Positions 1 to 64,000 of a DNA stretch of 64,000 nt are shown here, piece after piece. The stretch is from Oikopleura dioica (lineage: Eukaryota > Animalia > Chordata): positions 12,090,001 to 12,154,000 of the forward strand of contig OU015569.1 in assembly GCA_907165135.1 (NCBI GenBank). Direction: 5' to 3'. How positions within the stretch are numbered: the first letter of the stretch is position 1; each line of letters starts with the position of its first letter. A model generated the notes under the pieces. That model was given only the letters and a program-made list of their open reading frames with translations, searched no databases and was not told where the DNA came from. Made by a program: the position numbers and the translations under genes.

Positions 1-504
1 GATGGTCTTGGCCATTACTCTGGGCCTGACAAGTCGCAAAAGGCCGGAGGACCTCGACCTATAATGGGCGAAACTCATCTTCAAGAAGTCTGCAAAATGC
101 TTTTCTGTGGTCATCTTCAAATCAATTTGAAGGTTCAAGAAAATAAATCTATTAGCTTCATATTTTCAGTTCTGGATGTTTGACAAAATTGAAGGAGAAT
201 TCTGCGGATACTCTATTTCTTTTCAAAGAGAAAAAAATGACTCTCTCGGTGTTTTTGAATTCATTTTGAAGATTGGATCACCAGGTTTTAAGTCTTTTTT
301 TATTCTTTTTAATGTCATGTAGGGCAGGATTCATTCACTGCAATAGCAGAAGAAATCGACCCTCCACTTGGGAAAATAAGAAATACGGTCGATTTAACGA
401 GTGTTCTCGAAGACGATAAGCAAACAATGAAATTTGTCGGGAAGAATAACATGGTCTACATACGATATAATCTGACGAGAATCGTTAAAAAAGAAAAGTT
501 TTGA
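1..504 (+). CDS. 3' end of a spliced gene (5' part outside window); possible MATH/TRAF-like beta domain
   Basis: Three exons joined by short GT-AG introns read ...GHLQINLK|FWMFDKIEGEFCGYSISFQREKNDSLGVFEFILKIGSP|GQDSF...FVGKNNMVYIRYNLTRIVKKEKF* (TGA 502-504). Domain call rests only on alternating hydrophobic pattern. Confidence 0.5.
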
Positions 505-33000: not shown

Positions 33001-33756
33001 AAATCAGTTCGGACAAGAAGCATTCGCCAAATTCCTCAAGTCAGAGTATTCGGGCGAGAACTTGACCTTCTGGCTCCACACAAGGCGTTACAAAAGTGCA
33101 CCAGGTAAACTTCAAAATTCAAAACCGGCCGAAAAAACTGCTCTCTTTCAGTTTCCCGGCACCGCGTCATAGCCCGCGCTATTTACGAAAGACACATTTC
33201 TGACGAGTGTCAAGAACCGGTGAATTTGCCACAAGCCGATCGAAGAAAAATCGCCAGATCGCTCGAATCGGAAGAACCTTTGACGAGATTCCTCTTCGAC
33301 GACGCCGCCGAGGAACGAGTGCTTAATTTTTTGTGTCACATCTGCCCTCATTAACCTGAGTCAGGATCTCAAGGGCTTAAATGAAAAGCCGCGTAGCGGC
33401 TTTTTAATTATCGAAGCCGCGAAGCGGCTTCGCCAATTTTCAAAATGGATTAAATTTTGAAAGATAATTTGCGAAGCCGCTTCCCGGCTTCGTTTTTGAA
33501 AAAGCCGCTACGCGGCTTTTCATTTATCCTCTTCAGAAACTGACTCAGGTTTTCCACACAGGTTGCTCAGCCCAGATTCGCATATTTCTCATTGTATCAA
33601 ATTTTTACATATAAGTTAAATTTCCACCTTGGCATCAAATTGATAAGCACGGGCCAGCACATTTTCCGGCTGATGAAAGCGGACTCCTACAAACGCTTCC
33701 TGAACTCGGCAATTTACCAAGAAATGCTGGACAACGTGAAAGTGAAGCTCGCCTGA
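27061..33756 (+). CDS. RGS7: R7-family regulator of G-protein signalling (DEP-DHEX-GGL-RGS; RGS6/7-like)
   Basis: [31 protein letters not shown] (DEP); [11 protein letters not shown]...[10 protein letters not shown]; ARLELGDYE...[14 protein letters not shown]; [16 protein letters not shown]; [20 protein letters not shown]...FDDAAE|[23 protein letters not shown]. Start ATG 27061 (gccaccaccATGG, phase-compatible) is tentative. Confidence 0.9.
28082..28416. mobile_element. Kolobok-type MITE (GGACCCCCGTCA family)
   Basis: ttaa|ggacccccgtcaac...gttgacgggggggtcc|ttaa. Confidence 0.8.
28421..29099. mobile_element. Second TTAA-flanked element abutting the previous one
   Basis: ttaa|gggggtagaaacagcttt...aaagctgtttctaccacc|ttaa. 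Confidence 0.75.
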
Positions 33757-34404
33757 ACAAGACCCTGTTTTTGACCGAAACACGTGACCTCAACAAAACG
33801 TCTTTCAACCACTCACAAATCATCAGCAGCTACAGAACTCGACTCTTCCTTCCTCAAAACAACAAAAAAAGAACACTTCTTTGAAATTTAAATTCAATAA
33901 TTTCTAATTTCCAATTCACTGCACATTTTGAAAAAGAAAAAGAAATAGTTTCATTTTTTGCGCTCTGTAAATTGCAAATCTTAGAATTAAAAAAGAATCT
34001 TTAAAAAATTTCTTTCTTCGTATTTTTTGGCGAAAATTACTTAAAAAAAAGCGTTCATGATAAAAATCCCTTTGACCGAAGCAGCCTGGGCTCGGCAACC
34101 TGAGTAGAGAACCTGAGTCAGGGTCTGAAAGATCAAAAATGAAAAGCCGCAAAATTATCATTCAATTTTATTGCGGCTTTTCATTTTGATCTTTCAGACC
34201 CTGACTCAGGTTTGACAAGAAGGAAGAGGGGCAATAATCAGCGCGCTTATGCTCGTCAGTAAGATCGTAAAAACGAAGCCAAAAAGCGGAATCAGAAGAG
34301 TTTTATGATCTGCGCGTAAAATCGGCGGAGCGAGCATCATTTCAAAAATAAACTTCTTTTCTTGTTGATTATTATTTCTTTCGAGAAATCATTACAAACA
34401 GCTG

Positions 34405-37294
34405 ATGGATCGAGCAATCGAATTGAACAAAAGAATCTGTTCTTTGGTCGAGCTTCTGGGAGGCGAAGGAATTCCGATTGTTCTTGATCGAGTCGGCGGC
34501 GATTCCGGCCAAAAGACGGCAGGTTTCCAAGAGGCTTCTGTTGAAGAGAAAATGGACGAGACAAGTCAAGAATCTGAGGAGTATTACGAATCTGATGAAT
34601 TTTCTGACTCTGACGAGTCTTATGAGTACGAAGAAGTATTGACGCATCCAGAAGAATTGACAAGAGAAGCTGTTGAGAAATGGCTGGAAGAGTTTCAAAA
34701 GAAATTGAAGAGAAAAACGAGCAGAGATGATTTGGACAGGTTGATTTTGTCGATGGACAGAATGCAGTTTGAAAATGATCAGTGTGGTCGATGGGAGGAG
34801 GTCATTTTTGAACATGGAACAGGAAAGCTGTCTGGAACTAACTTTTGGGGAGAGAAAGTTCAGGAAGAATGGAGAGTAACTTCATTTCAAAAAATGATTC
34901 TTTCGAGAAATCCAGATTTCGAAGGACGAATAATTCAACGTTCAGAATTAAAAGAAGAAACCGGAGAATGGATTCTTGATGAATCTTTTCAGCAAATTTC
35001 AGCGGGAGGAGAAGCGATTGTTTTTGAAGAAAAATTCGGAGAATTGGAAGTGGCCGTTCGCGTTCAGGCTTTTGATCCCGCCCTATTTGTGGGGAATGAA
35101 GAATTGGAGTTTGGAATTCATCTTGCAAAAGGTAATTTTTGGCGTTTATCTTAAATAGGAAAAACTAAGGATTGATCGTAACAAAAAGGTTTGGTTAAGG
35201 AGGGATCACAACACTAAGGATTTTCCAAGGATGGAACGTAACAAAGATGATTTACTTGGGCCAAACCAAAATCAGGAAGTATAAAGATGGGAAGTGACAA
35301 AAAAGGAAGTAATATTTTTGGAATGGGTTTTCATTGGCCGGTAGGCCAAATGCAGCGATCTTATTGGTCTTCAGAAAATGCACTTCCTTTTTTGTCGCTT
35401 CCTATCTTTATACTTCCTTTTTTTAGTTTGTGCCATTTACTTACGATGGAAAGAATTATTTGGAAACTTCGATTTTTCAAGTGCAATTTTAAGGGTGTTA
35501 GCGGCCTACCCGCCTAAAGAAACCCCCCTTAAAATGAAGCTCTCGGCCCCTTCTAAAGTGTTGTGATCCCTCTTTAACCAAACCTTTTTGTTACGATCCT
35601 TCCTCAGTTTTTCCAAAATAAGATAAATGCCAATTTTTATTTTTTCATATTTTTTTATTATTCTTTAGAATACGAAATCGCCCATTACTACGAAAAAGAC
35701 GACGCCCGAATGATTCCTTTCCACAAAAACGTGATCAAAAATTTCTGCAACATCGAAGTCTTTTTGAGCAGCGACTTGGAGAAAGAAGACTGTGTTGGAT
35801 GGATCACGATAATGGAGAAATGCGACTCGGATTTGAGAAGCAAATTGAAGAATAATGAGTTGAATTTGGAAGAAAGGAAGAAAATTGCGATTGGCGTACA
35901 AGAGGGATCGGAGTATTTGGAGAATATTGGAATTTATCATTACGATGAGAAGCCAGAAAATGTCCTTTTGAAAAATGGAGAAGCCAAATGGATCGATTTC
36001 AGCATTATTCAGGAAGAGACTGGACTAGAGAGTTATCGGGAGATGGGTTACGCGAGGAGAGGAAGCAGATTTAGAAAAGGCAACTGTTTATGTAAGTTTT
36101 GAGCTTGTTGAAAAATTCTCGAATTTTATCTTTTTTTCGTAGATGCTGGGTCACCTGCCTTTTCTTATAGCCAGCAGATAGGCGGAGAATACGGAGTCGA
36201 TTTCTCTCGTCCTCATATTTTGATTCTTTGCGATTGGAAGACAGCCTGGACTCTTTTATTCAAACCAATCGAAGAAGAAGAAAGAGAAATCATCAAAAAA
36301 GAACTTGAGGTAAGTTTTTACTTTTTATAAAAGAAAATATTCTTTCTAAGACTTGCAATGCTGACTGGCTCTCAAACGAAGAAATACCATCAATCTCAAA
36401 AATCCAAAGCTTGTCAAAAATCATTTCTCTAAAAAGCGCGTCTTCTGATTTTTGCCTGGACGACCCAAATCTAACGAAATCAACTGCAATGGCCAGTCTG
36501 AAACAAAAACTGACAAAACAGATAAATTTCGATTTCAAAAATGTGACGAAGAATGTTTTAAACCAAAAAGAAAGCGATCTTTGTGTACCTATTTCTGTTT
36601 CGGTGCTTTTGAGATGGGCACTCAAAAATGATTTGAAAATTGAAGATTCTAAAATGGAAAGATTTTTTACTCTGGAAAAAATCTTCACAAATTTGACAAT
36701 GGTGATTTATCCGCGGAGTTTGGCTGGCTTCAATCTCAATCCGAAAAAAGAAGAACAAAAATTTCAAAACAACGAAATTGAAATGCTTCTCAGAAGATTG
36801 AAATTCAAGACTTATTTGAATAAAAGTGGATGGCAAGTTATAAAAGGAAGCACAAGCGACGCGATCAATGCCAGTTTCGATTTCGAGCAAGGTAAAGAAT
36901 CCAAAACTAAAAATCAAATGAAATTAAAAATTCAGTCCTCCTCCATGGCAACTTCGTCTTCTCTCGTCCCCTAACCGTCACCGGCGTTTATCCAAATCCG
37001 GACTCTTCAATGATTTTCCACCAAATGGTGCTGGACCGAATCGAAAACTCCGAATTCATTCTCCAAAACACTCTCATCGACCATTCCGGCTCTCAAATCA
37101 GAATTCCAGTTTCAAGAGAATTCTACGCTTCGTACGAAATGATGGAAGACTGTTACAACAGCTACCAAGATTTCGTCTATTATGGAGACAACAACGAGTT
37201 TCTTGAGTTAGTGAACGAAAATTTCAACATGGAAACAGAAAAATGGTATCTTCTGCCTCAAGCTTATTCAATCACTCTGACTAGAACTCGATGA
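34405..37294 (+). CDS. Atypical Ser/Thr-kinase-fold domain fused to a papain-like (clan CA) cysteine protease domain
   Basis: Five GT-AG exons (34405-35131, 35669-36091, 36143-36309, 36351-36891, about 36937-37294). Kinase motifs ISAGGEAIV, VAVR, IMEKCD, HYDEKPENVLL, IDFS. Protease motifs FDFKNVTKNVLNQKESDLC, RPLTVTG, HQMVLDRIENSEFILQNT. Confidence 0.8.
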
Positions 37295-37539: not shown

Positions 37540-40500
37540 TTAGACTTGGCAAATGTAGCGGAACTCGCGGTCGCATTTTGAGGGGTACCATTTGTAGCCG
37601 AACTGCAGGCCCGCGGACTGGATGCACCGCTCCGAGCGCTAGAATCGTTGAAAAAAGGGGATGAGTGGTGGAACTTACTGTGGGGCGGATTTCTCCGTAC
37701 CAGTTTTGGAAAGAGCTGTCCGTGACGGTCGTGTTGTCCACCCAGCTGAGACGGTCGCTCTCTTTGTCCAGCGACAATCCAACCCAGTAGGAAGTGTCCT
37801 GAACAGTTATTTCAATCAGTTCTGTTAAAAACCTGAGTCAGAGTTTTAAGCTGCTCAGCAGAAAGCCGCGTTGCGGCTTCGAAAAATAACCATTTGAATT
37901 TTCTAAAACAATCGAAGCCGATTCGTAGAGAGGGGTTATCATTCGAGCCTTTGATTCGAGCCATCCATTATCTCTAGAATCTTTGCTAGTGGTTAGGGTA
38001 AGGGACTGAAAGCCCCCTGGTTTAGGCCTTAGGAGGGGGGTCCCGGGGGCGTAGTCCCCTGGGTTAGGTTTAGGAATAGGGGCAGCTCGAATGATAACCC
38101 CCTACTACCAGCCGATTTGCGGCTTCGTATTTGTTAAAGCCGCAAGGCGGCTCTCTGTTGAGCATTTTCAAACCCTGACTCAGGTTTTTAACGATGGTTG
38201 TCGACTGGAATTTCAGTCAATTCGAAGATAATTGCCATCTAGCTTGACTTACATAAGAGCTGCCTCTGATCAAATTCGTAATAAACAACATCGTGTCCTC
38301 GTCCTTGATCACCGCCAAAGATCCGCCCTGTCTGTTACATCTCTGCTCGGCCGCCTCCCACGAGCGCTTGTCCTTGCTCAAGTTGAAGCAGAAGCTTCCT
38401 TTCTTTTTCCCGTGGCCGGCGCACCGGAATCGCGCGTCTTTAATCAATTTCTTTGAGCATTTTTGAACTCGGAAAGAGCTTCACTTACTTTGTAAGCGAT
38501 GCTTCGTAAAGTGCGCCACTGCTGCGTTGCTGGAAATCGACTCGGCCTGGGCGTTGAGGCGTTTTTCGTGCTCTTGGATTAGAGCTTCGTCGCGGCTTTT
38601 CCATTCCAGCAGTTTCTAAAGCAATCTTTGAAAAATTGTAAAATCAGAGAATTGACCCCCTATCTGGGCTCGGCAACCTGTAAGAAAAGCTTGAGTTAGG
38701 GTCTGAAAAATCAAAAAGAAAAGCCGTGTAGCAAGAATTTGAAAATTGACTAGAATGCTAACATTGCGAAGCCGCTTCGCGGCTTCGTTTAAAAGAAAGC
38801 CGCTACGCGGCTTTTCATTTGTGAACTTTCAGACCCTGACTCAGGTTTTCTACACAGGTTGATGAGCCCAGGTTATCAGCTGTGTTGACAAAAATGTGTT
38901 GACAAACGACTATTTGAAAATTATACGTATTAGCTTTTGATGAGTTGTGGCTGGAGAAAGAATAAAGAAATTATTGGTTCCTTTCGAAAAGTGGTCAGAG
39001 TCTGTCAAGGCGGAATTTCGAACGGCGCCAGGAAGAGTGATTGACGGGCGACGCACGAAAAGGGGATGGAAATTGAATTAGACACTGGAAAACGGATGGA
39101 ATCAACGAGGACTATTCAGATTTTTACTTCGAATTCTGCAAGACACAAAAGTTCTTACTTTTGGGTTGTGTTGAAAACCTGAGTCAGATTTTCTGTCCAC
39201 GGATTTTTTCATGCTCAGGACCCTGACTCAGGTTTGCACACAGGTTGCAGAACTCAGCTGAAGGCTGGGCACGGCAACCTGTGTAAATCCTGAGTCAGGG
39301 TCTGAAAGATCTCTAATAAAGGGATTCAGACCCTGACTCAGGTTTTCTTTACAGATTACCGAGCCCATATCTTACCTTGACTTCGTGCTGGTATTCAGAA
39401 ACGACGCTCAAAATCTGCTGTCTCTCGTCTTTTAGTTTCTGAACTTCGATCGCCAAAAACTCATTTTCTTCCTTTCGCGATTTCAATTCCAACGCCATGG
39501 TCGATTTCTCCGAAAGAACGAGATCCATTCTCAACTGCTGCTGAATAATCGCCTGGCCGATTGCCGGAGGAATGTCGCACTCGCAATTTTTTCCGTTTTC
39601 CGATTTCTCCGTTTTTAAAAGCTGCTCTTCGAAATCCGGCAGTTTTTTCAGCGTCGTCGAGTTCGTTTTTCGCTTTGGAAAGTCGCCGAAATTCTGCTTG
39701 AGCGAAATTTCCTGGATCTGGTCTGAAGGGGACTCATCAGAAGCTACTAATTAGGGCGATTCACGGGCATTTGTCAAGTCGGGCAATTAAATTTAGGATT
39801 AAGAAATTCAAGATCAAGTTTAACCACTCTGAGCCTGGGAAGAAAAGGGGGGACAAAATGAGACTTTTCTGCAAAAAAAAAAGGATTGGCATTTTAAATT
39901 GCCTGCCTCAAAGTATTTTTAATAAATTGATCAAGTCGATGATTAGCTCTGGCGAGAAGATGAGTCCCGGTGTCTAGGATGTAGACTTGGTTCTTTTCTA
40001 ATTTCTCCACTCGATGGGAAACGTCGTTCTTGATGATTGTGTCTCTGATCATTTCCGAGGTTCTGTTACCAGATGTTCTATATGAGCAGCTCTAGAACTG
40101 CTCTGAATGACTAAATTACTGATCGAAAATCTGTTCCTTTGCAAGTCGCGTTCGAAAACCTCGATCGCTTCGGCAATCTGGCGCATGAGCTCGCTCCTCA
40201 GCGTCGTCATGTTTCTGTAGATCGCGCTTTCCAAAGTAAAGTTCATCCCTTCCGCGGAAAGGGCAGGTACAGTCACTTCGCTCTGTTCGCTTTCGCTCAG
40301 TTTGGGGATGATTGGCATCGAGTTTCTGACCGTTCGGGCTTTATGACGCGATCTTAATTGCAAAAATCAAATTTTCATACTGTGGTGAAAACCTGAGTCA
40401 GGGTCTGAATGAGATTACATGACAAGCCGCGTAGCGGCTTTTTAAAGAACGAAGCCCCGAAGCGGCTTCGCAAAATTACTTTTCAAATCAATTTTTAAAT

Positions 40501-63574: not shown

Positions 63575-64000
63575 TCATCGAGTTCTAGTCAGAGTAATTG
63601 AATAAGCTTGCGGCAGAATATACCATTTTTCAGTTTCCATGTTGAATTCTTCGTTCACTAACTCAACGAACTCGTTGTTGTCTCCATAAAAAACAAAGTC
63701 GTTGTAGCTGTTGTAGCAGTTTTCCATCATTTCGTAAACGGCGTAGAATTCTCTTGAAACTGGAATTCTGATTTGAGAGCCGGAATGGTCGATGAGCGTG
63801 TTTTGGAGAATGAATTCGGAGTTTTCGATTCGGTCCAGCACCATTTGGTGGAAAATCATTGATCGGTCGGGATTTAGATATGCGCCGGTGACGGTTAGGG
63901 GACGGGAGAAGACGAAGTTGCCATGGAGGAGGACTTAATTTAATTTTTATTTGATTTTTAGTTTTGAATTTTTACCTTGCTCGAAATCGAAATTGGCAGT
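63575..64000 (-). CDS. 3' end of a second kinase-papain-like protease gene copy (continues beyond the window)
   Basis: Last exon nearly identical to about 36937-37294 (VLLHGNFVFSRPLTVTG...FHQMVLDRIENSEFILQNT...TLTRTR*), with a homologous last intron and preceding FDFEQ. Confidence 0.85.

What the first reader, a model, noticed from the sequence alone, without database searches (positions are those of the whole stretch)
34405..37294. Atypical kinase fused to a cytosolic papain-like cysteine protease
Seen: after splicing, a kinase fold is followed in-frame by FDFKNVTKNVLNQKESDLC and HQMVLDRIENSEFILQNT. Known: papain (C1A) has Q19-x5-C25 and H159-x15-N175; the spacing here is identical (Q-KESDL-C; H plus 16 = N), and FDF..V..V.NQ and RPLTVTG echo the DWR..GAVTPVKNQ and PVSVA strands. 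The kinase keeps the catalytic D-x-K-x-x-N but has VAVR instead of VAIK, HYD instead of HRD and DFS instead of DFG, so it may be a pseudokinase. No signal peptide or propeptide is visible. Inference: a kinase-switch plus protease-effector protein, possibly in innate immunity or cell death. I do not know of a characterised animal protein with this architecture.
Basis: partly seen in the sequence, partly recalled or inferred. Interest (0 to 1): 0.85.

Follow-up and report, generated by a model that had tools for sequence, protein, structure and literature searches.

The report
Kinase fused to papain-fold protease
This looks like an intact gene of an Oikopleura-type tunicate that joins an unusual protein-kinase domain to a very divergent papain-type cysteine protease in one chain; it belongs to a large, unstudied gene family whose function nobody has tested.

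Summary
Five GT-AG exons (34405-37294, +) give an open 738-aa protein that aligns colinearly with Oikopleura dioica proteins. Exons 1-3 encode a divergent protein-kinase fold. Exons 4-5 encode a ~300-aa domain that no sequence search recognises. An AlphaFold model of a homologue (about 46% identical overall) matches only clan CA cysteine peptidases: all 50 rows shown in both VIA-align searches, Z up to 10. The alignment to papain starts at the Gln19 equivalent. The Gln/Cys/His/Asn set is kept in 91/93, 89/91, 39/40 and 35/40 family members and is intact here.

The kinase has Arg for the beta-3 Lys in every family sequence with a recognisable motif, keeps H-x-D-x-K-x-x-N, and this copy alone has DFS for DFG.

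No RNA reads lay on this gene in four runs, so the transcript is unconfirmed. A paralogue is transcribed. dN/dS against a neighbouring paralogue is 0.23.

Most likely it is a cytosolic cysteine (iso)peptidase coupled to a kinase or pseudokinase module. Substrate and biological role are unknown.

I found no paper on the family. The nearest published architecture is plant EDR1, a papain-like domain fused to a kinase.

The scan has already reported this family at least ten times elsewhere in this genome, so this is one more intact member.

The parts
34405..35131 (+). Exon 1: start codon, acidic low-complexity N-terminus (aa 45-84), family-specific N-terminal region and kinase N-lobe. Degenerate glycine loop SAGGEA at 34999-35016; beta-3 motif VAVR (Arg instead of Lys) at 35050-35061.
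   Evidence: ORF and splice model; motif coordinates; family alignment
35132..35668 (+). Intron 1 (537 nt, GT-AG). Almost wholly made of a nested foldback (inverted-repeat) element with 89-nt arms at 35127-35215 and 35557-35645.
35669..36091 (+). Exon 2: kinase catalytic core. Catalytic loop HYDEKPEN at 35938-35961; DFS (in place of DFG) at 35995-36003.
   Evidence: Pfam PF00069 at 33.7 bits against cut-off 31.7 on this exon alone
36143..36309 (+). Exon 3: kinase C-lobe. P+1-loop-like GSPAF at 36148-36162; subdomain-IX-like CDWKTAW at 36229-36249.
36351..36891 (+). Exon 4: conserved linker motif FCLDDPNLTKS (36450-36482) and the helical lobe of the papain-fold domain. Oxyanion-hole Gln511 at 36564-36566; catalytic Cys517 at 36582-36584, at the start of a helix in the homologue model. 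Family-specific block YPRSLAGFNLNP at 36708-36743.
36936..37294 (+). Exon 5: beta-sheet lobe of the papain-fold domain. Strand RPLTVTG at 36965-36985; His648 at 37019-37021; Asn664 at 37067-37069 (His+16, across a beta-hairpin); stop codon at 37292-37294.
63578..64000 (-). 3' end of a paralogue, cut by the window edge. Its last exon, 63578-63931, is 92% identical in protein to exon 5 of this gene, with His and Asn kept.

Best explanation
This is an apparently intact five-exon gene for a 738-aa intracellular protein. It belongs to a large gene family seen so far only in Oikopleura dioica and in unlabelled metagenome fragments. The protein has a divergent eukaryotic protein-kinase fold followed, after a conserved linker, by a very divergent clan CA (papain-fold) cysteine peptidase domain with Gln511, Cys517, His648 and Asn664 at the papain positions. 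The architecture, the fold, the conservation of these residues and the purifying selection are shown here. The following are inferred. The C-terminal domain is a working cytosolic cysteine endo- or isopeptidase. The attached kinase-like domain regulates or targets it. That domain may act more as a nucleotide- or ligand-binding pseudokinase than as a strong phosphotransferase, because the family has Arg at the beta-3 Lys position and a degenerate glycine loop, and this copy also has DFS for DFG. A full-length model of a homologue has pTM 0.82, which suggests the two domains pack rigidly and fits intramolecular coupling. Substrate and biological role are unknown.
For: Gene model: open frame, four GT-AG introns, and a colinear 46%-identity alignment to P0084 with no gap at three of the four junctions and a two-residue gap beside the exon 1/2 junction.
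Kinase: Pfam PF00069 above its cut-off. A PDB profile search hits many kinases at about 1e-7 over the catalytic loop. Foldseek gives probability 1.00 to GSK3, CaMKII, MAPK and others for the full-length homologue model. H-x-D-x-K-x-x-N is kept across the family.
Protease: the model of the homologous domain has pLDDT 78.8, with the Cys at the start of helix 93-108 and His and Asn on adjacent hairpin strands. All 50 rows shown in the VIA-align wide search are cysteine enzymes of the papain-like (clan CA) fold, nearly all of them peptidases: xylellain Z 10.0 at 3.1 A over 154 residues, Der f 1 Z 9.9, cathepsin B Z 9.6, PCAT1 Z 9.6. Papain 1stf_E scores Z 9.5, with model residues 87..313 aligned to papain 19..212, so the alignment starts at Gln19.
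Conservation across the family: Q 91/93, C 89/91, H 39/40, N 35/40.
Selection: dN/dS is 0.23 against the paralogue in the same window.
Location: no signal peptide or membrane segment.
Family: 68 relatives found with exon 4 alone, 44 longer proteins (367-795 aa, some partial) and 337 profile hits. Every named one is O. dioica.
Transcription: a paralogue is transcribed in run X5.
Against: No RNA read lay on this gene in four runs, so neither expression nor the splice pattern is shown directly.
The structure was predicted for a homologue (P0084, 51% and 44% identical to the exon 4 and 5 pieces), not for this protein.
No sequence method links the domain to any peptidase family. Pfam found nothing at E<=1 except one member at E=0.0036 to PF03051, and the PDB profile search found nothing. 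Foldseek E-values were only 0.03-0.3.
Z about 10 is only modestly above the 7-8 that the tool calls typical for unmatched models.
Beta-3 Arg, a degenerate glycine loop and DFS argue against ordinary kinase activity in this copy.
The Asn is not kept in the most divergent members.
Confidence: 0.65

Rival explanations
1. The C-terminal domain has the papain fold but is not a peptidase in the usual sense. It may be another clan-CA-type enzyme (transglutaminase, deamidase or acyltransferase), as in several branches of the superfamily.
For: The fold matches are tied between very different clan CA families (C1, C39, C47, C71 PeiR, C78 UfSP, C54 ATG4, phytochelatin synthase). No sequence family assignment was possible. 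A review of the superfamily lists many non-protease members (PMC10318531).
Against: The Gln six residues before the Cys (the oxyanion hole of papain) and the Asn 16 residues after the His are the hydrolase arrangement, and they are conserved. The best-scoring matches are true endopeptidases.
Confidence: 0.12
2. Both domains are pseudoenzymes. The protein is then a scaffold or sensor, and its conserved 'catalytic' residues are kept for binding rather than for chemistry.
For: Beta-3 Lys is replaced by Arg, and the glycine loop is degenerate, in every family sequence with a recognisable motif. This copy also has DFS. Two family members carry Ser for the catalytic Cys.
Against: Cys is kept in 89/91 members and His in 39/40, in a family whose members are down to about 25-30% identical. 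The kinase catalytic-loop Asp, Lys and Asn and the DFG Asp are kept. This pattern is what purifying selection on active sites would give.
Confidence: 0.1
3. This particular copy is a silent or decaying paralogue, open by chance, in a family with frequent gene death.
For: No reads in four RNA runs, including one (X5) that holds a paralogue's transcript. It has a unique DFG-to-DFS change. A 537-nt foldback element fills intron 1. Earlier notes of this scan report broken copies elsewhere in the genome (unchecked).
Against: There are 738 codons without a stop and four canonical splice sites. All four protease residues are intact. dN/dS is 0.23 against the nearby paralogue. Only about half of each bulk run and 4% of the single-cell run were read, and the stages and tissues are unknown.
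Confidence: 0.12
4. The fusion is an artefact of the gene model: a kinase gene and a separate protease gene lie next to each other.
For: No transcript evidence exists for this locus.
Against: Exons 3 and 4 are separated by only 41 nt, with GT-AG ends, and the frame runs on. Many O. dioica database proteins carry both parts in one chain and align without a gap at that junction. The full-length model of a homologue has pTM 0.82.
Confidence: 0.03

Closest known systems
Papain family C1 (papain, cathepsins B/L, Der p 1, xylellain)
   Same: Same two-lobe fold in the model (Z 9.2-10.0, rmsd 3.1-3.8 A over about 150 residues). Same order and spacing of Gln-x5-Cys and His-x15-Asn. Cys sits at the N-terminus of the central helix, and His and Asn lie across a beta-hairpin.
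   Different: No detectable sequence similarity (Pfam PF00112 gives no hit; 8-16% identity in the structural alignments). No signal peptide, I29 propeptide or papain disulfide cysteines. It is cytosolic and fused behind a kinase. It has family-specific blocks (YPRSxAGLNLNP, SGW) without a papain counterpart.
C39 double-glycine leader peptidase domains of bacterial ABC exporters (PCAT1, ComA)
   Same: Equally good fold match (Z 9.1-9.6, rmsd 2.8-2.9 A over about 127 residues). The alignment starts six residues before the catalytic Cys (model 87 = PCAT1 15). The third catalytic residue lies 16 after the His. These are peptidase domains built into a larger multidomain protein.
   Different: Bacterial, fused to a transporter, smaller (about 130 aa), with Asp rather than Asn. 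No Pfam PF03412 hit.
Plant EDR1/CTR1-type proteins (EDR1 domain PF14381 + Raf-like kinase)
   Same: This is the published case of a papain-like-fold domain joined to a protein kinase in one eukaryotic chain (PMC10318531, read). PeiR (C71), which that paper calls similar to EDR1, is among my fold matches at Z 9.0.
   Different: The domain order is reversed (papain-like domain N-terminal in EDR1, C-terminal here). No PF14381 hit at E<=1. The kinase is a Raf-like TKL there and unassignable here. The lineage is plants rather than a tunicate.
KSR-type pseudokinases
   Same: Arg in place of the beta-3 Lys while the catalytic loop and the DFG Asp are retained. That mammalian KSR1 has this substitution is from my own knowledge. 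KSR1 is among the PDB sequence hits.
   Different: No specific relationship. The hits are equally good to TTK, BRAF, DAPK1 and CDK9. There is no CA1-CA4 architecture.

Membership tests
Clan CA (papain-like fold) cysteine peptidases | Two-lobe fold with the nucleophile Cys at the N-terminus of a helix and the His on a beta-strand of the other lobe | tested here: met
   The AlphaFold model of homologue P0084:383-697 (pLDDT 78.8) has Cys93 as the first residue of helix 93-108 and His226 in strand 223-234. All 50 rows shown in two VIA-align searches are clan CA cysteine enzymes, Z up to 10.0. This was tested on a homologue, not on the window's own chain.
Clan CA (papain-like fold) cysteine peptidases | Catalytic residues in the order Gln, Cys, His, Asn/Asp, and conserved | tested here: met
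   Window protein: Q511, C517, H648, N664. Family: Q 91/93, C 89/91, H 39/40, N 35/40. Structural alignments start at the Gln19 equivalent of papain and the Gln23 equivalent of cathepsin B (residue numbering of those enzymes is from established knowledge).
Clan CA (papain-like fold) cysteine peptidases | Thiol-dependent peptide or isopeptide bond hydrolysis | not testable with these tools
   Needs recombinant protein, activity-based probes and a Cys517Ala control.
Peptidase family C1 (Pfam PF00112 / PF03051) | Significant match to the family profile | tested here: not met
   No hit at E<=1 for exons 4 and 5. Of 43 family members scanned, one matched PF03051 at E=0.0036, which is below threshold, and none matched PF00112. 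The PDB profile search was empty.
Peptidase family C1 (Pfam PF00112 / PF03051) | Secretory zymogen: signal peptide, I29-type propeptide, conserved disulfides | tested here: not met
   The N-terminus is charged and the highest 19-residue hydropathy is 1.11. There are only four Cys from aa 441 onward, and none three residues before Cys517. No I29 hit.
Peptidase family C39 | Match to PF03412/PF13529 profiles | tested here: not met
   No hit. There is fold similarity only: Z 9.1-9.6, and ESM Atlas structural neighbours carry PF03412/PF13529 at TM 0.36-0.45.
Eukaryotic protein kinase superfamily (PF00069) | Profile match above the gathering score, and a kinase fold | tested here: met
   Exon 2 alone scores 33.7 bits against a 31.7 cut-off. 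Homologue P0084 scores 44.8 bits. The full-length homologue model matches many kinases at Foldseek probability 1.00, E about 1e-6.
Eukaryotic protein kinase superfamily (PF00069) | Canonical catalytic residues: GxGxxG loop, beta-3 Lys, HRD Asp, catalytic-loop Asn, DFG | tested here: inconclusive
   Kept: Asp, Lys and Asn of H-x-D-x-K-x-x-N, and the DFG Asp. Not kept: beta-3 Lys (Arg in every family sequence with a recognisable motif), the glycine loop (S-x-G-G-E-A), and the DFG Gly in this copy only (DFS). The pattern fits either an atypical kinase or a pseudokinase.
EDR1-domain kinases (PF14381 + kinase) | Match to the PF14381 profile, with the papain-like domain N-terminal to the kinase | tested here: not met
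   No PF14381 hit at E<=1. The domain order is the reverse.

The most novel reading that the evidence does not exclude
The family is a new clan CA peptidase family found only in appendicularians. In it, a kinase or pseudokinase domain acts as a built-in switch for a cytosolic cysteine protease. It would be a single-chain counterpart of kinase-plus-protease death or immune modules. Its expansion to dozens of fast-diverging paralogues would then reflect a conflict-driven (defence or self/non-self) role.
Probability: 0.15. Interest if true: 0.8.

Novelty: new variant of a known kind. Interest (0 to 1): 0.55.

Why it matters
If the protease is active, this would be a new sequence family of papain-fold peptidases. 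It would also be a rare case in animals of a kinase-like domain and a cysteine protease hard-wired in one cytosolic chain, expanded to dozens of copies in a chordate with a very compact genome. That offers a natural system for studying how a kinase or pseudokinase can gate a protease. It may also bear on how Oikopleura replaced signalling or defence modules that it lost. For annotation, the database proteins of this family are currently labelled only 'protein kinase domain-containing' or 'uncharacterized', so the protease half is unannotated.

Tried and rejected
1. RNA support. Five reads in X5 that touched 35914-35945 belong to a paralogue. The transcript therefore stays unconfirmed.
2. Sequence routes to the C-terminal domain all failed. 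These were Pfam on exons 4 and 5 and on 43 family members, a family profile against all PDB sequences, and ESM Atlas by features (best score 0.89, below the level the tool calls meaningful).
3. Foldseek against PDB gave no significant match (best E 0.027). Its top list was nonetheless already enriched in clan CA peptidases. The fold assignment rests on VIA-align.
4. I could not fold the window's own C-terminal domain. It is split by an intron, so it has no single reference, and I did not type it in. A homologue served as proxy. Model coordinates are not exposed, so Cys-His distances and the kinase-protease interface could not be inspected.
5. Assigning the domain to one clan CA family was rejected because C1 and C39 are tied within 1 Z unit.
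6. Assigning the kinase to a group was rejected because the hits to TTK, BRAF, DAPK1, KSR1, CDK9 and GSK3 are equally weak.
7. A profile search for relatives outside Oikopleura listed only O. dioica or unlabelled metagenome proteins among its best 120 of 337 hits.
Full report
**Observation**

The region 34405-37294 on the + strand holds a run of open reading frames. Four short GT-AG introns of 537, 51, 41 and 44 nt join them into one 2217-nt coding sequence of 738 codons with no internal stop. FDFKNVTKNVLNQKESDLC lies at 36528-36584 and HQMVLDRIENSEFILQNT at 37019-37072. The kinase motifs are also as described: VAVR at 35050-35061, HYDEKPEN at 35938-35961 and DFS at 35995-36003.

The spliced protein aligns colinearly from aa 76 to aa 734 with database protein P0084 of Oikopleura dioica, at 46% identity. 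There is no gap at three of the four exon junctions and a two-residue gap beside the exon 1/2 junction. That is indirect support for the splice model. The micro-introns, and the fact that every named relative is from O. dioica, point to an Oikopleura-type tunicate as the source. No database protein is closer than 78% identity over part of the chain, or 48% over the full length. The exact strain or species therefore appears not to be in the protein collection.

**Transcript**

No read lay on the gene. Five reads in run X5 overlapped only 35914-35945, and their flanks did not match the window. Translated, those reads give IAIGLKNGFEYLENIGIYHYDKKLENFLLL, which is 87% identical to the catalytic-loop region of paralogue P0072.

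So the family is transcribed in this organism, and run X5 does contain its RNA. Expression and splicing of this copy remain unshown.

**Kinase part**

- Exon 2 alone passes Pfam's Pkinase cut-off, at 33.7 against 31.7 bits. Homologue P0084 scores 44.8 bits.
- A family profile hits many solved kinases at about 1e-7, but only over the catalytic loop to the DFG motif. TTK, BRAF, DAPK1, KSR1 and CDK9 are tied, so no group can be assigned.
- A full-length AlphaFold model of P0084 has pLDDT 81.6 and pTM 0.82. It matches kinases at Foldseek probability 1.00.
- In the family alignment, the glycine loop is S-x-G-G-E-A and the beta-3 Lys is Arg in every family sequence with a recognisable motif.
- H-x-D-x-K-x-x-N and DFG are conserved across the family. 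The window's copy is the only one with DFS.

The pattern fits an atypical kinase or a pseudokinase. I cannot decide between them.

**C-terminal part**

No sequence method recognises this domain:

- Pfam gave nothing at E<=1 for exons 4 and 5.
- Among 43 family members, only one gave a sub-threshold hit, to Peptidase_C1_2 at E 0.0036.
- A family profile against all PDB sequences found nothing.
- ESM Atlas feature scores were below the meaningful range.

The window's own domain is interrupted by an intron and has no single reference. I therefore modelled the homologous domain of P0084 (residues 383-697), which is 51% and 44% identical to the exon 4 and exon 5 pieces, using a 43-sequence family alignment.

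- The model has pLDDT 78.8. From residue 90 onward most 10-residue blocks exceed 85, apart from a loop at about 131-160 (53-73).
- The conserved Cys is the first residue of a long helix (93-108).
- The conserved His lies in strand 223-234.
- The Asn 16 residues later sits just after the return strand of the same hairpin.

This is the arrangement of papain's Cys25, His159 and Asn175, a comparison that rests on established knowledge of papain.

Foldseek found nothing significant, but its top rows were already mostly clan CA peptidases. VIA-align against 48,161 representative chains gave 21 chains at Z>=8, and every one of the 50 rows shown is a clan CA cysteine enzyme:

| Chain | Z | Fit |
|---|---|---|
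| Xylellain | 10.0 | 3.1 A over 154 residues |
| Der f 1 | 9.9 | – |
| Cathepsin B | 9.6 | – |
| PCAT1 (C39) | 9.6 | 2.8 A over 127 residues |

Staphopain, UfSP, ATG4 and streptopain follow lower in the list.

A second look at Foldseek's top 1000 put ervatamins at Z 9.9 and papain itself at Z 9.2-9.5. Model residues 87..313 align to papain 19..212. The same register holds for cathepsin B (model 87 = residue 23) and PCAT1 (model 87 = residue 15).

The tool warns that Z 7-8 is common for unmatched models, so Z 10 alone is modest. What makes the fold assignment convincing is three things together: the uniformity of the list, the coverage of the whole domain, and the agreement of register with conserved residues.

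**Conservation**

I aligned all retrieved family proteins to a family HMM.

| Residue | Kept in | Exceptions |
|---|---|---|
| Gln | 91 of 93 | Glu, Phe |
| Cys | 89 of 91 | Ser (two sequences) |
| His | 39 of 40 | Phe |
| Asn | 35 of 40 | lost only in the most divergent members |

Family members are down to about 25-30% identical to one another. The window's copy has all four residues. A paralogue whose 3' end lies at 63578-64000 on the minus strand is 92% identical in the last exon, and dN/dS between the two is 0.23. The domain has therefore been under purifying selection since that duplication.

**Location and context**

The protein has no hydrophobic N-terminus or membrane segment. It has only four cysteines from aa 441 onward, none at the papain disulfide position next to the nucleophile. 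A cytosolic location is the sensible reading.

A strongly conserved linker motif, FCLDDPNLTKS, lies between the two domains. It is disordered when the protease domain is modelled alone, but gains confidence in the full-length model. Together with pTM 0.82, this suggests that the domains pack together. I could not inspect the interface because coordinates are not exposed.

The neighbouring genes are an RGS-domain exon upstream and a C-type lectin exon downstream on the other strand. They give no functional clue.

**Family and literature**

- Exon 4 alone found 68 relatives among 1.84 billion representative proteins. Two of these were spurious repeat proteins.
- A longer paralogue (P0007) found 44 proteins of 367-795 aa, some of them partial.
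- The domain profile found 337.
- All named hits are 'unnamed protein product' or 'protein kinase domain-containing protein' of O. dioica. The rest are short ENA or JGI metagenome contigs.
- Full-text searches for Oikopleura with kinase and cysteine protease, with papain, or with kinome found no description of the family.
- A 2023 classification of papain-like proteins notes that the plant EDR1 domain (PF14381) is papain-like and often fused to a kinase (PMC10318531). This is the nearest published architecture. Its domain order is reversed, and no PF14381 match exists here.

Earlier notes of this scan report the same family at ten or more other places in this genome, some intact and some broken, and one with a UBA tail. 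They gave me the organism name before my own searches confirmed it. My results agree with them. I did not check their counts or the UBA claim.

**Verdict**

The most likely mechanism is a cytosolic clan CA cysteine (iso)peptidase coupled in one chain to a kinase or pseudokinase regulatory module. The architecture, fold, residue conservation and selection are shown. Catalysis, coupling and any immune or cell-death role are inferred or speculative.

By sequence criteria the domain is not a member of C1 or C39 and would form a new clan CA family. As one more intact member of a family this scan has met repeatedly, and with no transcript evidence, it merits moderate interest.

Noticed in passing
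window 35127-35645 (intron 1, 35132-35668): The only long intron of the gene (537 nt, against 41-51 nt for the others) is almost entirely a nested foldback. It has 89-nt arms at 35127-35215 and 35557-35645 (85% complementary), with a second 54-nt inverted pair inside. The outer arms reach to within a few bases of the donor and about 20 bases of the acceptor. This looks like a MITE-like insertion that is spliced out, or that created the intron. No other copy of the arm is in the window.
   Followed up: partly
window 34110-34212: A perfect 29-nt inverted repeat with a 45-nt spacer lies about 200 nt upstream of the start codon, between the RGS-like gene and this gene. Its function is unknown; it could be a small foldback element or a terminator-like hairpin.
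   Followed up: no
window 33592-33753 (+): An exon encoding the C-terminal end of an RGS domain (Pfam PF00615, E 7.6e-05, just under the cut-off) lies upstream on the same strand.
   Followed up: partly
window 38220-38447 (-): An exon encoding the start of a C-type lectin domain (Pfam PF00059, E 4.2e-04, just under the cut-off) lies downstream on the opposite strand. An earlier scan note mentions lectin/EGF cassette genes just beyond the window.
   Followed up: partly
window 63578-64000 (-): A second family member, convergent with this gene and about 26 kb away, is cut by the window edge. Its last exon is 92% identical in protein to exon 5 of this gene, and the intron position before it is shared.
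   Followed up: partly
window 34537-34656 (aa 45-84): An acidic Glu/Ser/Asp/Tyr-rich low-complexity stretch in the N-terminus has no counterpart in the O. dioica homologues, whose alignment starts at about aa 76-90.
   Followed up: no
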